A stretch of 63,878 bases of DNA, counting the filler, from Octopus bimaculoides (taxonomy: Eukaryota): NCBI RefSeq assembly GCF_001194135.2. It is 7 parts of 7 records of this genome, joined end to end, with 100 filler letters (N's around TTAATTAATTAA, not from the genome) between each part and the next. Parts side by side here need not be neighbours in the genome. Positions count along the whole stretch, not along the records: positions 44,986 to 50,928 come from NC_068995.1; 6 more parts are not named here. One strand, 5' to 3'. Position 1 is the first letter of the stretch, and each line of letters starts with the position of its first letter. A program made the position numbers and the translations under genes. Positions 44,986-51,028 of the stretch are shown piece by piece. The notes under the pieces were generated by a model. The model did not search any database and was not told the DNA's origin. It saw nothing but the letters and a program-made list of their open reading frames with translations.

Positions 44986-45380
44986 GATGAGTTCTTCCCT
45001 TCCTTAAGTTCCCTCCAATGTTCGTTTGCCCGCTCCCCTATGCTCCTTGCTGTTTCGTCTACATATGTCGTTGTCTTATTTCTGCATCGTCCCTCTGTAC
45101 ATCTTATACTATAGACCACATTTCTGGTTTTGCAGTTCGTTTGTGGGCTAAATCTACATACGATACAGTTCCTATCAATGCAGGGGGTTCTACTGAAAGG
45201 GTATGTTCTACTGATAAGGGATTTAATAGGGTTGCCTGGCCTTTCAACAACCTTAATTCTTAGTTTAAGTTTGTCTAGGGCCCTTCTAAAGCGGTACGCC
45301 AGTTCGCCTCTAGGGGTGGTGTCGACGAACATGACGCTCTGGTACTTGAGGCTATCGTACCATGAGCTTACCTTCCCTAT
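44986..45380 (-). mobile_element. Penelope-like element GIY-YIG endonuclease fragment with Cys-rich linker
   Basis: PCIDRNCIVC...NCKTRNVVYSIRC...YVDETARSIGERANEH (VVY / YxGET / R / H pattern). The Cys-rich RT-EN linker is as described for Neptune-type PLEs. Truncated by an N gap. Confidence 0.85.
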
Positions 45381-47115
45381 TATTTAAACCAATAATAATA
45401 TGAACATAGTATAATACAATACATAGATAAACAAATGGAATTAAATACTACATACGTTAACAAAATTTAATTAAACACAAAAAACACACACACACACACA
45501 CATATGAACAAATAAATAAATAAAAACAAATACAAACGAACACGTATTAACAGAGTATATAGGTGATACAGACACTCTCCATACACACATGCACTTACAA
45601 AAGACACAGACACATTGAAAGACACGCATGCGTAGACACATACAATACGAATACAAAATACAAAATGGCTGATATTTAGCAAGGTGAGACCCACATAAGA
45701 AGGAAGGAAACANNNNNNNNNNNNNNNNNNNNNNNNNNNNNNNNNNNNNNNNNNNNNNNNNNNNNNNNNNNNNNNNNNNNNNNNNNNNNNNNNNNNNNNN
45801 NNNNNNNNNNNNNNNNNNNNNNNNNNNNNNNNNNNNNNNNNNNNNNNNNNNNNNNNNNNNNNNNNNNNNNNNNNNNNNNNNNNNNNNNNNNNNNNNNNNN
45901 NNNNNNNNNNNNNNNNNNNNNNNNNNNNNNNNNNNNNNNNNNNNNNNNNNNNNNNNNNNNNNNNNNNNNNNNNNNNNNNNNNNNNNNNNNNNNNNNNNNN
46001 NNNNNNNNNNNNNNNNNNNNNNNNNNNNNNNNNNNNNNNNNNNNNNNNNNNNNNNNNNNNNNNNNNNNNNNNNNNNNNATATATATATATATATATATAT
46101 ATAGTTAAGTATTTGCATAGATATACGTTGCCTGTGAAAATGCACGTACTCATGTTTGCGCTTGTGTTTTGAAGTTCGGAATCTAAAAAATATTTTGTTA
46201 TCTTTGTCTTGTAATGATATATTTAACCTTAGTTGTATAAATATATCGCTTCTATTTAGAAGTACACTACCCTTACTCTTTACTTTGTACATTTTGCAGA
46301 CTTACATTTAAGTTTTCATGTTACACCTCTTATTATATCGTGAATGCTATCGAATTTATTTCATAAAACCACGCTGCCTTGCTTTTATTTTCTCTAGTCT
46401 ATAAACATTTTCAAGCTATGTGTGTATATGTATTCGCATAAAAGAAATTTCTGCTCTGTATCGCGGTTTTTAATGTCTAATCATAGGATACACATTCTGT
46501 CTCCGTCTCTCAGTATGTCCATCTGTCTGTCAATCTGTCTGTTCCTCACCTCTCTCTCACTCACTCTGTATTTCAATCAGATTCTATAATCCCCCTCAGA
46601 CAAATAAATTCAAAACTACTGATGAGAAATCAAAACCAGATAGGCTGCCATTCTCCCATCTGTGAACATATTAGCATATTTATTGAGCGTAAACATACGT
46701 AATTATTTAGATATTATCTATGTATTCGTATAATTATATAAGTAACTTATACACATCGTTCATTGTATATATTCATAAACAGATAATTCATATTCTAAAA
46801 TAATAATCGTTATTTATGCTTTGTTTTCCCAATGATTAGATGATAAAGTTAATACATTAGTAACAATATACCATGTAACAGCTTAAGTGATTATTAATGC
46901 TAATATATTTGTGTTACATTTTCGAATCAGTATTAGCAGATTACCTCTCGGCTCCAAAATAAATGTTTTGAAATTTGTCTCTAGAGGCTCTCAAGAGCGG
47001 AGAACTGCATTTGGCTTTGTTTACTTCAATTAGTTGTTAATATTTCATTCCCTACTCTTATGAAACATAACAATTTCGTGTAATTTCATCAATAACCCTT
47101 CCTCACGTTCAATAT

Positions 47116-47306
47116 ATGAATGCACTCGACTGCACTGATTCACACATCAGTCTACGCACGCACACACTCGCATACAGACACACAAGCACACGCATATATG
47201 AATACATACATAAGTATATATGTGCATGTCAAACATTCGATACACACACACATATATGCTTATATGAGTGCATTCACATATGCATATGTCTATATATATA
47301 TATCTA

Positions 47307-47388
<82 letters not shown>

Positions 47389-47472
47389 CACACATATACA
47401 GATATAGATATAGATACACACACACATACACACACAATCCCAAACACACACACACACACATATATATATATA
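47116..47472. repeat. CA/TA microsatellite block upstream of the receptor gene
   Basis: Directly visible; near-pure (TA)n at about 47290-47385. Confidence 0.95.
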
Positions 47473-48144
47473 TGGTAAAGTATTACTGACGCAATTAAAA
47501 TTTTCTTTACATTATTAATGCTGTTATTGATATTTGTGTAATTTCATCCGGGGATTGTCGTCATTGTTTCTCCTGCAGCAACTGTTGTTTAAATATTCAT
47601 CTTTAGTGTTTCTCGGTTATAAATGCATTGAGTTTTATAGCACATGACTGCATTCCAAGCATTGACATTTTGCATGATTTTAGCCACCGAATCACCGATC
47701 TGATCTAGCTAGATGTGTTATCACATTATTTAGAATCATATGTTTGAAAGAATTCTCTTCTTGATTTTCACACGAAAACATCGTCCTACGGCTTCACGCG
47801 GATAAAGACAGCTAGAAGACCAAAACAATAATTATAACATTCATTGAAATATCTAATGCGAAACCCAACCTGTTAACTGACAGCAATAAAACCTCAACCA
47901 ACATATTTTTGTGGAAGTTTTAAAATGTGACGTTGACAAATCGCTTGCGACTCTACATCTTGCAAATTCCTCATCATACACAGAACTCAAATATATAATG
48001 ACAAAGTGGACAGCACAAAACTTTTCGTGAAGGTATTAGAATTTTCATATTTTTCAGTAAAATTGGCATTCTGTGAAGTTTATTAATTTGTATTTTATAT
48101 GCAGATTTTGGCTTTTTCTCTATCGTATGATAAAAGTCTAATAT

Positions 48145-48250
48145 GTAAGTTAGCAATCTATCCTGGCAATATTTTCTTTTATCGACTTCTATTACTAAAA
48201 ATTAACGAGGAAGTAATAAAACACCGACCAAATGAAATTTTACTTTTTAG
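48145..48250 (+). other. Putative 106-nt 5'-UTR intron of the receptor gene
   Basis: GTAAGT donor consensus at 48145-48150; T-rich acceptor TTTTACTTTTTAG ending at 48250; CTAAA/TTAAC branch-like motifs at about 48195-48205. Splicing would remove ATG 48232 and leave ATG 48265 as the first ATG. Confidence 0.4.
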
Positions 48251-49464
48251 AAGTAATCTACACAATGATATTTGTGATATATCTTGTTTTTATTCTGATT
48301 TCGAGTATACCGATAGTAAAGTCTACCCCTACGTATGGCGATGAAAGGCTATTAAGAGAAAAATTGTTAACTAATTATAGTAAAAGTATAAGACCAGTTA
48401 TTAATTTGACCAAAGTAGTTGATGTAACTGCTTTACTGTACCTTCAAACACTTTATGATTTGGACTTTGTAAATAACTTTATAATGGCACGCTACTATTT
48501 GGGATTAATATGGATCGATGAAAAGTTGACTTGGAATCCGTTGGACTATAACAATATTACGAGTATATATCTACCCAAAGATAAGATATGGACGCCACCT
48601 ATTAAAATGTGCAATTCAATGGACAAATCAGAAGAAAACGATGGTGTAGGTGAATTAATGCTTACTTATACGGGTTGGATTAACATGTGGTCATTCAGAT
48701 TACTGCACACTTATTGTCAAATCAACGCTTACACCTATCCATTTGATGAACATACGTGCGAAATTTATCTGTGTGTCGCTTTGCATACTATTAACCATAC
48801 CAGAATAAAGGAACTCATATACGAAGATTCAAAGTTTACACAAAACTATAAGTGGGATATAAATGTCTCTGGTAAAGTGAATGGTACTGACGAATTATTC
48901 AGTTACGCATTTGCACCGATGTACTTACGACGTAAACTTACCGTAGGAATCATAGCTATGCTTATTCCAACAGTAATGATGACTATTTTAACTATTTTTG
49001 TTTTCCTTCTACCTCCTGAATCGGGGGAAAAAGTTTCTCTGGCGACTACAATATTTTTATCAAACGTCTTGTACCTTGTCCAGATCGATAAAACTACTCC
49101 AACAAATACAAAATATCCTTCACTTCTAATGTTATATTTAATGTTATTGTCAATGTTAAGTGGAATCGCTACACTTGGTTCTGTGGTTATAAGTAAGTTG
49201 TATGTAATTCAGTCACCTTCCTTGAGAAAATCGAACCCGTCAGATCAAAATATGAATAAATCTCATACTAATAAAGTTGCAGATATTTCAACAATTTCCA
49301 AGGTACAATCAGATTTGCCGATTAGAGAGAAGCCAAACGAGAAACGAATATATTGCATATCCGACTATATACGGCTCGATGACATATTTCTAAAATTAAG
49401 CATTGCTACATCTGTAATAATCTCAATGATATTTACATGTTTGTTGTTTATTCCACTTGAATAA
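48232..49464 (+). CDS. CRT1: Intronless divergent Cys-loop pentameric ligand-gated ion channel subunit; cephalopod chemotactile receptor (CRT1-like). Likely true start is Met12 at 48265
   Basis: 410-aa uninterrupted ORF. It has a signal peptide (MIFVIYLVFILISSIPIVKS|TPT), an N-terminal helix plus IRPV motif, W-x-D-x-x-L-x-W and WTPP. The Cys-loop is C162-x13-C176 (CQINAYTYPFDEHTC) with YPFD, followed by four hydrophobic helices with PPESGEK before M2. Loop-C vicinal Cys-Cys is absent. Six extracellular N-glycosylation sequons (N48, N58, N108, N188, N211, N217). The CRT1 name comes from recall of the published O. bimaculoides protein and should be confirmed by BLAST. Confidence 0.9.
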   Translation: MKFYFLEVIYTMIFVIYLVFILISSIPIVKSTPTYGDERLLREKLLTNYSKSIRPVINLTKVVDVTALLYLQTLYDLDFVNNFIMARYYLGLIWIDEKLTWNPLDYNNITSIYLPKDKIWTPPIKMCNSMDKSEENDGVGELMLTYTGWINMWSFRLLHTYCQINAYTYPFDEHTCEIYLCVALHTINHTRIKELIYEDSKFTQNYKWDINVSGKVNGTDELFSYAFAPMYLRRKLTVGIIAMLIPTVMMTILTIFVFLLPPESGEKVSLATTIFLSNVLYLVQIDKTTPTNTKYPSLLMLYLMLLSMLSGIATLGSVVISKLYVIQSPSLRKSNPSDQNMNKSHTNKVADISTISKVQSDLPIREKPNEKRIYCISDYIRLDDIFLKLSIATSVIISMIFTCLLFIPLE

Positions 49465-49670
49465 AAATATGAATGTGAAATTACACGACAGTTTACTAAA
49501 ATCGCTGTGAATTTGAATGTGCTTAGCAGAAAGGAAAAGAAATTTGCGATATGGAAGATCAAACATTATTTATTACTTGTATTTTTTGTCTTCTACTTTA
49601 GTATTGATACATGTTCATTGAAAGATATATGTGAAAAAATAAAAACACAAGTTCAACTGAATCCCTATAT

Positions 49671-49803
<133 letters not shown>

Positions 49804-50488
49804 AGCAATGTTAAATCTCTGAACGAGGTATTAACAGTAACTGCACGACAAGGTGAAGTATATTTGCCACTTAAATGTGGCTGAACCCTAAGGGTGGATG
49901 TTACTGTTGCTGTTATATATANNNNNNNNNNNNNNNNNNNNNNNNNNNNNNNNNNNNNNNNNNNNNNNNNNNNNNNNNNNNNNNNNNNNNNNNNNNNNNN
50001 NNNNNNNNNNNNNNNNNNNNNNNNNNNNNNNNNNNNNNNNNNNNNNNNNNNNNNNNNNNNNNNNNNNNNNNNNNNNNNNNNNNNNNNNNNNNNNNNNNNN
50101 NNNNNNNNNNNNNNNNNNNNNNNNNNNNNNNNNNNNNNNNNNNNNNNNNNNNNNNNTGTATATGTGTACAAATCTACGTATATGTAAGCATGTATAATTG
50201 TGTATGTATTTGTATAAAACCATATATATATATATATACATATATATATGTGTATGTGTATACACTCAGACATGTATATGTATATGTGTGTGTGTGTGTC
50301 CGTGTGTGCGTGTGTATAGATATATAAACAGGAGTAGCCCAGCTATTTCTCCGCTGATTGAAAAATATAGAACAACCTTAATCGATTTTCGAAATATATT
50401 AGCTTCTCATCAAAGGTGTCTACATGAATTTGATGAATCCCAGAGAAGCAACTTGCCAACCTGTTTATATACTCAACAATTATAGAGT

Positions 50489-50819
50489 GTCTTTTGCCGA
50501 ACTGCTAGGTTACAGGGATGTAAATACACCAACATCGGTTTCCAGGTGACGTAGGGTGAGAAATACAGACACGCAAACACACACACACACACACACACAT
50601 ACACACACACACAGAGGCACACATACGCACACACACACACATATATATGTATATACCACGGGCTTTTGTCATTTTCCGTCTATCAAATCCATTCCCAAGG
50701 CTATGGTCCGCCCGAGGCGAAAGCAGAGGACACATGGCCAAGTTGCCACGCAGTGGAACTGAACCCGAAAATCATATGGTTGGGGAGCAAGCTACTTACC
50801 ACCCAGCCACTCCTGCGCC

Positions 50820-50820
<1 letters not shown>
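50489..50820 (-). mobile_element. CORE-like SINE copy with internal microsatellite
   Basis: Reverse complement of the 3404-3700 SINE (AGCTACTTACCAC, TTCCGTCTATCAAATCC, TCTTTTGCCGAAC). Confidence 0.85.
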
Positions 50821-50867
<47 letters not shown>

Positions 50868-51028
50868 TAGATAGATAGATATATATATATAGATACTTAA
50901 GTATGTAAGCATGTTAATATCACATTACNNNNNNNNNNNNNNNNNNNNNNNNNNNNNNNNNNNNNNNNNNNNTTAATTAATTAANNNNNNNNNNNNNNNN
51001 NNNNNNNNNNNNNNNNNNNNNNNNNNNN

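What the first reader, a model, noticed from the sequence alone, without database searches (positions are those of the whole stretch)
48589..48790. Loop A Tyr replaced by Cys and loop B Gly/Trp by Cys/Ala: candidate extra disulfide at the former agonist site
Aligning WTPPIKMCN to nAChR alpha W86-x-P-D-x-x-x-Y93-N puts C127 at Tyr93. Aligning C176-EIYL-C181-V-A183 to C142-xxxx-G147-S/T148-W149 puts C181 at Gly147 and Ala at the cation-pi Trp149. Both principal-face aromatics are therefore lost. The two new cysteines are the only extracellular Cys outside the Cys-loop and map to neighbouring loops, so a C127-C181 disulfide is a plausible inference.
Basis: partly seen in the sequence, partly recalled or inferred. 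Interest (0 to 1): 0.7.

Follow-up and report, generated by a model that had tools for sequence, protein, structure and literature searches.

The report
Paired cysteines in octopus receptor CRT1
The piece encodes the already published octopus touch-taste receptor CRT1. Its two extra extracellular cysteines are gained and lost strictly together across the receptor family, which fits a second disulfide in the ligand pocket, but the bond was not seen directly here.

Summary
The ORF at 48232..49464 (+) is 100% identical to Octopus bimaculoides chemotactile receptor CRT1 (PDB 8EIS, 9E6B/C/D, 9YI4).
- C127 aligns with nAChR alpha Tyr93.
- C181 aligns with Gly147.
- A183 aligns with Trp149.
- P123 replaces the WxPD Asp89.
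- C127 and C181 are the only ectodomain cysteines outside the Cys-loop (C162, C176).

In published mature numbering the pair is C96/C150.

About 53 CR-family sequences were examined: about 44 have both cysteines, 9 have neither, and none has only one. On a bootstrapped tree, the Cys/non-Cys changes at the two columns fall on the same 4 of 86 branches (chance about 2e-5). Among 190 other pLGIC domains the pair is absent, apart from one flatworm domain that carries both.

A preprint reports that C150A is expressed but unresponsive to ligand, and treats C150 only as a ligand-contacting residue.

I could not measure the S-S distance. No coordinates are exposed by the tools, and the primary structure papers are not held.

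Verdict: a loop A to beta7/loop B disulfide at the floor of the still-used orthosteric pocket is very likely (about 0.8). The protein and its structures are already known, so anyone with the PDB files can settle this in minutes.

The parts
48232..49464 (+). Single-exon CDS of chemotactile receptor CRT1, 410 aa from the first in-frame ATG, stop codon included. The deposited full-length chain starts at M12 (nt 48265). The mature protein starts at T32.
   Evidence: ORF; 100% identity to 9e6b_A over aa 12-410 and to 8eis_A over aa 32-410. Pfam Neur_chan_LBD 2e-31 and Neur_chan_memb 6e-12.
48589..48615 (+). Loop A motif WTPPIKMCN (aa 120-128), the counterpart of nAChR alpha W86-x-P-D-x-x-x-Y93-N94.
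48598..48600 (+). Codon CCT = P123, at the position of the WxPD Asp89. In nAChRs this Asp tethers loop A to the loop B backbone (my recollection of that literature).
   Evidence: The position is Asp in nearly all non-CR outgroups. It is not Asp in the cysteine-pair CRs, with one exception (P0182, Octopus sinensis).
48610..48612 (+). Codon TGC = C127 (mature C96), at the position of the loop A aromatic Tyr93.
48715..48759 (+). Canonical Cys-loop, C162-x13-C176 (mature C131-C145): CQINAYTYPFDEHTC.
   Evidence: Both Cys are invariant in alignments A1-A3.
48772..48774 (+). Codon TGT = C181 (mature C150), at the end of strand beta7, at the position of nAChR Gly147. The C-x4-C spacing from C176 is kept in all cysteine-pair CRs.
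   Evidence: C150A mutant expressed but unresponsive.
48778..48780 (+). Codon GCT = A183 (mature A152), at the position of the cation-pi Trp149 of loop B.
   Evidence: A152 is listed as a ligand-interaction residue under purifying selection in bioRxiv 10.1101/2025.10.28.685082.

Best explanation
C127 and C181 (mature C96 and C150) of octopus CRT1 form a second extracellular disulfide that is specific to the cephalopod chemotactile-receptor (CR) family.

What it does: it staples the end of the loop A strand to the end of strand beta7, just before loop B, at the floor or back wall of the orthosteric pocket.

What it replaces: three elements that build the principal face of the acetylcholine site in nicotinic receptors, namely the Tyr93 ring, the Gly147 it packs on, and the Asp89-to-loop-B tether. 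Together with Trp149 becoming Ala, this turns an aromatic cation-binding box into the flat, rigid, hydrophobic groove that CRs use for poorly soluble ligands.

Shown here:
- identity with CRT1
- the residue mapping
- strict paired gain and loss of the two cysteines

Taken from a preprint: C150A gives an expressed but ligand-unresponsive channel.

Inferred: the covalent bond itself, and its role as a structural replacement for the Asp89/Tyr93 scaffold.
For: Identity and topology
- 100% identity to CRT1 structures 8EIS and 9E6B/C/D, 9YI4.
- The AF2 model superposes on 8eis_A with TM 0.93 and rmsd 2.0 A.
- The model has a short strand at 124-126, immediately before C127. C181 lies at the end of strand 173-182.
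- Loop A strand beta4 and beta7 are neighbours in the outer sheet of the pLGIC beta-sandwich. This is established family topology, from my own knowledge.

Mapping
- C127=Y93, C181=G147, P123=D89.

Co-variation
- Among 27 close CRs: 23 C/C, 4 neither, 0 single.
- Among 225 pLGIC ectodomains: 34 C/C, 190 neither, 1 artefactual single.
- Thirteen more CR-family sequences: 11 C/C, 2 neither, 0 single.
- Squid CRB1 (8eiz) has Tyr at both positions.

Phylogeny
- The CR clade has bootstrap 100, with C/C in both deep branches.
- Parsimony places the changes at the two columns on exactly the same 4 of 86 branches.
- The sister groupings that define the paired events have bootstraps of 99-100.
- The chance of such coincidence is 4.7e-7 unweighted and about 2e-5 weighted by branch length.

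Other
- The double-loss gene P0010 (Gly/Thr, 79% identical to its C/C sister P0005) is identical in five separate SRA assemblies, so it is real and intact.
- C150A is expressed but gives no response to progesterone or norharmane.
- One Macrostomum lignano pLGIC domain independently shows the same pattern, Cys at the Tyr93 position plus C-x4-C after the Cys-loop.
Against: - The bond was not observed. No coordinates of 8EIS or of the AF2 model are available through the tools, so the Sg-Sg distance is unknown here.
- The two preprints from the laboratories that solved the structures never use the words 'disulfide' or 'cysteine'. They list C150 simply among residues involved in ligand coordination.
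- Loss of function in C150A is equally expected if the side chain only contacts ligand. Its neighbours V151A and L153F/M/N are also unresponsive.
- Strict co-variation proves functional coupling, not a covalent bond.
- The tree is a simple NJ tree. Some sequences are >90% identical cluster mates and are not independent.
Confidence: 0.8

Rival explanations
1. The two cysteines are neighbouring free thiols that line the hydrophobic pocket. They are co-conserved because both contact ligand, or together bind a metal ion, and no disulfide forms.
For: C150 is listed among ligand-coordinating residues and C150A abolishes responses. The accessible literature never mentions a disulfide.
Against: - Two ligand-contact residues have no reason to be lost only together. 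Here every one of 3-4 transitions is paired and no single-Cys CR exists.
- The replacements after loss vary widely (G/T, L/G, F/G, S/Y, H/Y, Y/Y). That fits release of a pairing constraint better than retention of a contact chemistry.
- Adjacent thiols in a secreted ectodomain exposed to sea water would be expected to oxidise (general protein chemistry).
Confidence: 0.1
2. The four ectodomain cysteines pair in a non-canonical way, for example C127-C176 with C162-C181, or shuffle between states as a redox switch. In that reading the simple C162-C176 plus C127-C181 pairing is wrong.
For: C176 and C181 are only five residues apart on one strand, so C181 is spatially near the Cys-loop disulfide (sequence). 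Nothing measured here fixes the connectivity.
Against: - C162 and C176 are invariant in every pLGIC aligned, including the 190 domains and the 9 CRs that lack C127/C181. The canonical Cys-loop bond therefore does not depend on the extra pair.
- The AF2 model matches 8EIS at 2.0 A with a normal fold.
Confidence: 0.05
3. The co-occurrence is phylogenetic inertia. Both cysteines arose once in the CR ancestor and are merely inherited together, with no interaction between them.
For: Most C/C sequences are octopus paralogues from a recent expansion, so raw counts overstate the number of independent observations.
Against: On a tree built without the two columns, changes at both columns coincide on the same 4 branches. 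The relevant nodes have 99-100% bootstrap, and the chance is about 2e-5. A flatworm domain shows the same pair independently.
Confidence: 0.05

Closest known systems
Octopus bimaculoides chemotactile receptor CRT1 (PDB 8EIS; 9E6B, 9E6C, 9E6D, 9YI4; UniProt A0A0L8FVQ9)
   Same: It is this protein: 100% identity over the whole deposited chains. The published work already shows a hydrophobic orthosteric pocket that has diverged from nAChRs. A C150A mutant, expressed but unresponsive to ligand, has also been reported.
   Different: Nothing differs in sequence. The window's ORF only extends 11 codons further upstream, to an earlier in-frame ATG. The C96-C150 pairing is not mentioned in any text I could read.
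Squid bitter receptor CRB1 (PDB 8EIZ) and CRB-like decapodiform CRs
   Same: Same CR family and fold (E 6e-38; TM 0.81). The WxPD Asp and Trp149 are also lost.
   Different: Tyr occupies both positions in place of the two cysteines. Relatives P0059/P0197 have H/Y, and P0070/P0198 have Y/Y. Their sister P0062 keeps C/C.
Nicotinic acetylcholine receptor alpha subunits (for example Torpedo/human alpha1, alpha7)
   Same: Same superfamily, the same Cys-loop, and the same location of the orthosteric site at the loop A/B/C face.
   Different: nAChR alpha has Asp89, Tyr93, Gly147 and Trp149, plus a vicinal Cys192-Cys193 disulfide in loop C. CRT1 has Pro, Cys, Cys and Ala at the first four positions and no vicinal pair. 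The extra disulfide would lie in loop A/beta7, not in loop C.
Second ectodomain disulfides of other pLGICs (loop C disulfide of glycine receptors and GluCl; from my own knowledge, not tested here)
   Same: These are precedents for an additional structural disulfide in a pLGIC ligand-binding domain, close to the agonist site.
   Different: Those bonds bridge the two arms of loop C. The CR pair would bridge loop A to beta7/loop B, and it occupies former agonist-contact positions.

Membership tests
[quoted passage not shown] | Neur_chan_LBD ectodomain followed by the Neur_chan_memb transmembrane domain | tested here: met
   Pfam PF02931 2e-31 and PF02932 6e-12, both above the gathering cut-off.
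[quoted passage not shown] | Cys-loop: two cysteines separated by 13 residues, with the xPFD core | tested here: met
   C162-QINAYTYPFDEHT-C176. Invariant across alignments A1-A3.
[quoted passage not shown] | Beta-sandwich ectodomain plus four transmembrane helices | tested here: met
   AF2 model helices at 238-259, 265-288, 298-332 and 376-406. Foldseek TM 0.93 to 8eis_A.
Cephalopod chemotactile receptors (CR), CRT1 | Sequence identity with the characterised receptor | tested here: met
   100% identity to PDB chains named 'Chemotactile receptor CRT1' and 'Octopus sensory receptor'. UniRef name.
Cephalopod chemotactile receptors (CR), CRT1 | Placement inside the monophyletic CR clade, separate from canonical nAChRs | tested here: met
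   CR clade bootstrap 100/100.
Acetylcholine-binding (alpha-type) nicotinic subunit | Principal-face aromatic box: Tyr93 (loop A) and Trp149 (loop B) | tested here: not met
   Cys and Ala at these positions.
Acetylcholine-binding (alpha-type) nicotinic subunit | Vicinal Cys-Cys at the tip of loop C | tested here: not met
   No adjacent cysteines anywhere in the ORF. The loop C region is GKVNGTDELFSYAF.
Structural disulfide C127-C181 | Both cysteines in the oxidising (extracellular) compartment | tested here: met
   Both lie in the ligand-binding domain, upstream of M1.
Structural disulfide C127-C181 | The two cysteines are conserved, and lost, as a pair | tested here: met
   About 44 C/C, 9 neither and 0 single among CR-family sequences. 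Changes fall on the same 4 of 86 branches, chance about 2e-5.
Structural disulfide C127-C181 | Sg-Sg distance of about 2.05 A, with connecting density in the solved structure | not testable with these tools
   The structures exist (8EIS, 9E6B-D, 9YI4), but no coordinates are exposed. The primary papers are not held.
Structural disulfide C127-C181 | Chemical proof: linked peptide under non-reducing conditions and no free thiols | not testable with these tools
   This needs an experiment.

The most novel reading that the evidence does not exclude
The cysteine pair was present in the common ancestor of all cephalopod chemotactile receptors. It served as a covalent replacement for the nicotinic Asp89/Tyr93/Gly147 scaffold. 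It has since been exchanged as a unit several times, for example to Tyr/Tyr in the squid bitter receptor lineage and to Gly/Thr with Asp at the WxPD position in P0010. On this reading it acts as a two-residue switch between a flat hydrophobic pocket and a more aromatic or polar one. It might also make the pocket sensitive to reductants at the sucker surface. None of this is discussed in the literature I could read.
Probability: 0.3. Interest if true: 0.5.

Novelty: already known. Interest (0 to 1): 0.3.

Why it matters
CRs are a textbook case of a neurotransmitter receptor turned into a sensory receptor. If the disulfide is real, remodelling of the pocket was more than a loss of aromatic residues: a covalent brace was put in their place.

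That brace would have to be considered when interpreting the C150A loss of function. That mutant is currently read as a ligand-contact mutant.

It also bears on three further points:
- modelling or simulating the receptor with the correct bonded state
- engineering CR ligand selectivity
- explaining why squid CRB-type receptors, with Tyr/Tyr at these positions, prefer different ligands

The practical value is modest, because the solved structures can confirm or refute the bond at once.

Tried and rejected
1. Reading the primary papers. Allard et al. 2023 (DOI, PMC10228259, PMID), Kang et al. 2023 (PMC10262778), van Giesen et al. 2020 (PMC7605239) and the Current Biology primer (PMC11055638) are all not held.

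2. Full-text searches for 'chemotactile' with 'disulfide', 'disulphide' or 'cysteine' found nothing about a CR disulfide.

3. Getting the distance from an AlphaFold2 model. The tool returns only pLDDT and secondary structure, and no coordinate file appears in /data. Foldseek shows only that the model matches 8EIS.

4. Enlarging the CR sample with two profile searches of the 5.8-billion-sequence database added few new sequences. The full-scan representative search was more useful.

5. A first bootstrap script using Biopython's BLOSUM distance timed out. It was redone with a fast Kimura distance.

6. The single 'Cys only at 127' case (P0036, Mya arenaria) was rejected as an alignment artefact of a 12-residue insertion.

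7. The minus-strand ORF at the left edge of the piece has no Pfam match and was not pursued.

Full report
**What is in the window.** The usable piece (44986..50928) is AT-rich, microsatellite-laden animal DNA with two N gaps. Its only long ORF is 48232..49464 on the + strand: 410 aa with no interruption. A search of PDB sequences shows it is 100% identical to 'Chemotactile receptor CRT1' over aa 12-410 (9e6b_A; also 9E6C, 9E6D, 9YI4). It is also 100% identical to 'Octopus sensory receptor' over aa 32-410 (8eis_A). The next hit is squid CRB1 (8eiz, E 6e-38), followed by nicotinic and 5-HT3 receptors. Pfam finds Neur_chan_LBD and Neur_chan_memb. The locus is therefore the single-exon gene for Octopus bimaculoides CRT1, a protein with several solved structures.

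**Numbering.**
- The deposited full-length chain starts at M12.
- The mature protein starts at T32.
- Published numbering is therefore ORF minus 31.
- C127 = C96, C181 = C150, and the Cys-loop C162/C176 = C131/C145.

This is confirmed by the published pocket residues Y58, W122, F124 and F192, which fall on Y89, W153, F155 and F223 of the ORF.

**Checking the observation.** The coordinates and motifs are exact.
- WTPPIKMCN is aa 120-128.
- CEIYLCVA is aa 176-183.
- The cysteines are at 127, 162, 176, 181, 375 and 403.
- The last two lie in the cytoplasmic loop/M4 region according to the model's topology.
- C127 and C181 are thus the only ectodomain cysteines outside the Cys-loop.

HMMER alignment to Torpedo alpha in mature numbering gives W120=W86, P123=D89, C127=Y93, N128=N94, C176=C142 and C181=G147. 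A183=W149 holds in the ungapped alignment to human alpha1 and in the MAFFT alignment with canonical nAChRs, which read Y/G/W/D at the four columns. The Torpedo pairwise alignment opens a small gap at its fading end, so that one assignment is slightly softer.

**The co-conservation test.** Homologues came from three sources: the word-indexed database, a full HMMER scan of 1.84 billion representatives with a CR profile, and cluster look-ups.
- Among the 27 closest CRs, 23 have Cys at both columns, 4 have Cys at neither (G/T, S/Y, L/G, F/G) and none has just one.
- Across 225 HMM-aligned pLGIC ectodomains the counts are 34 both, 190 neither and 1 single.
- The single case is an insertion artefact in Mya arenaria P0036; MAFFT places His there.
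- Thirteen further CR-family sequences give 11 both, 2 neither and 0 single.
- Squid CRB1 has Tyr at both positions.

**The tree test.** I built an NJ tree from the alignment with the two focal columns removed.
- The CR clade is monophyletic (bootstrap 100).
- The cysteine pair is present in both of its deep branches. These include the very divergent octopus CRs that are only 26-30% identical to CRT1.
- Fitch parsimony places the Cys/non-Cys changes of the two columns on exactly the same four of 86 branches.
- Those branches are: the origin of the pair; P0010; the P0022/P0024/P0025 group; and the P0062 versus P0059/P0070 split.
- The defining sister groups have 99-100% bootstrap.
- Chance coincidence is 4.7e-7 unweighted and about 2e-5 when branches are drawn in proportion to their length.
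- The cleanest double loss is P0010, which is 79% identical to its C/C sister P0005. It is found identically in five independent SRA assemblies, so it is a real, intact gene.
- A Macrostomum lignano pLGIC domain independently carries Cys at the Tyr93 position together with C-x4-C after its Cys-loop.

**Structure.** An AlphaFold2 model built from alignment A1 has mean pLDDT 78. Blocks 121-130 and 171-190 score 77-89. The model superposes on 8eis_A with TM 0.93 and rmsd 2.0 A.
- C127 directly follows a short strand (124-126).
- C181 ends the long strand 173-182 (beta7).
- In the pLGIC fold, beta4/loop A and beta7 are neighbours in the outer sheet, and the loop A Asp89 contacts the loop B backbone.
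- An antiparallel register that brings residue 93 next to residue 147 agrees with that.

The last two points rest on my knowledge of the family, not on a measurement here. I could not obtain coordinates for the model or for the PDB entries, so the Sg-Sg distance, which is the decisive number, remains unmeasured.

**Literature.** The primary structure papers are not in the held library. Two preprints from the same groups are.
- The first describes the CRT1 orthosteric pocket as flexible and hydrophobic, diverged from nAChRs, with ligand contacts Y58, W122, F124 and F192.
- The second adds the progesterone complex. It calls L153 the back wall of a conserved inner pocket, finds A152 and L153 under purifying selection, and reports a mutant panel.
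- In that panel C150A is expressed but gives no response to progesterone or norharmane. The same is true of V151A.
- Neither preprint contains the words 'disulfide' or 'cysteine'.
- Full-text searches for chemotactile receptors together with disulfide found nothing relevant.

The pairing thus seems not to have been discussed in the texts I could read, although it would be visible to anyone who opens the deposited models.

**Mechanism.** My best explanation (confidence about 0.8) is a CR-specific disulfide C96-C150 that ties loop A to beta7/loop B at the floor of the orthosteric pocket.
- In nAChRs that region is organised by the Asp89-loop B tether and by the Tyr93 ring lying over Gly147 beneath Trp149.
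- In nearly all cysteine-pair CRs, Asp89, Tyr93, Gly147 and Trp149 are all replaced. Asp89 becomes Pro/Ser/Ala/Glu/Asn, with one exception (P0182 keeps Asp). Tyr93 and Gly147 become Cys. Trp149 becomes mostly Ala.
- A covalent link would keep loop B in place without the aromatic scaffold.
- It would also leave a flat, non-polar surface suited to steroids, terpenoids and beta-carbolines.
- P0010, which lost both cysteines, has Asp at the WxPD position where its sisters have Glu.
- The squid CRB lineage fills both positions with Tyr.

Both of the last two points suggest that something must occupy or brace this spot. These are inferences.

**Rivals.**
- Two free thiols acting as ligand or metal contacts (about 0.1). 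This is hard to reconcile with losses that are always paired and with the very varied replacements.
- Non-canonical or switching connectivity with the Cys-loop cysteines (about 0.05). This is unlikely because C162/C176 are invariant with or without the extra pair.
- Mere shared ancestry (about 0.05). This is contradicted by the coincident transitions.

**Verdict.** Two corrections apply: the site is the current orthosteric site, not a former one, and the published residue numbers are C96/C150. The gene, its structures, the loss of the nicotinic aromatic box and a C150A mutant are already published. I therefore rate the finding 'already known' and of modest interest (0.3). The added value is the evidence for strict paired evolution, and the point that the C150A phenotype may reflect a broken disulfide, not a lost ligand contact.

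Noticed in passing
window 48232-48267: The ORF begins at an in-frame ATG 11 codons upstream of the start used in the deposited full-length CRT1 chain (M12, nt 48265). Which ATG is used in vivo is not decided by the sequence. It shifts residue numbers by 11 relative to UniProt and by 31 relative to the mature protein.
   Followed up: partly
window 48598-48600 (P123): The Asp of the conserved WxPD loop A motif is Pro in CRT1, and non-Asp in nearly all cysteine-pair CRs seen. The exception is P0182 (Octopus sinensis), which keeps both cysteines and has Asp. P0010, which lost both cysteines, has Asp here while its two sisters have Glu. This may be compensation.
   Followed up: partly
P0079 residues 182-338 (Macrostomum lignano, UniRef A0A1I8GX25): A flatworm pLGIC domain inside a 1792-aa fused gene model carries Cys at the Tyr93 position (LLWQPDVAFCN) and C-x4-C after its Cys-loop (CHQRWC). 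This is the same pattern as CRs, apparently arisen independently. The domain is truncated just after.
   Followed up: no
window 44986-45332, minus strand: A Cys-rich ORF runs off the left edge of the piece (...CIDRNCIVCRFSPQTNCKTRNVVYSIRCTEGRC...YVDETARSIGERANEH...). It has no Pfam match at E<=0.01. The VVY...YVDET motif resembles a GIY-YIG nuclease core, as found in Penelope-like retroelements. That resemblance is from memory only.
   Followed up: partly
window 47290-47385, 49668-49800, 50560-50650, 50820-50890; N runs 45714-46078 and 49922-50156: Long (TA)n, (CA)n, (TG)n and (GA)n microsatellites and two assembly gaps flank the gene. This is typical of the octopus genome. The CRT1 coding region itself is free of repeats.
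   Followed up: no
P0070 and P0198 (ENA contig of 168,729 bp): Two CRB-like receptors, both Tyr/Tyr at the focal positions, are encoded on the same contig. This is consistent with tandem arrays of CR genes in decapodiform cephalopods.
   Followed up: no
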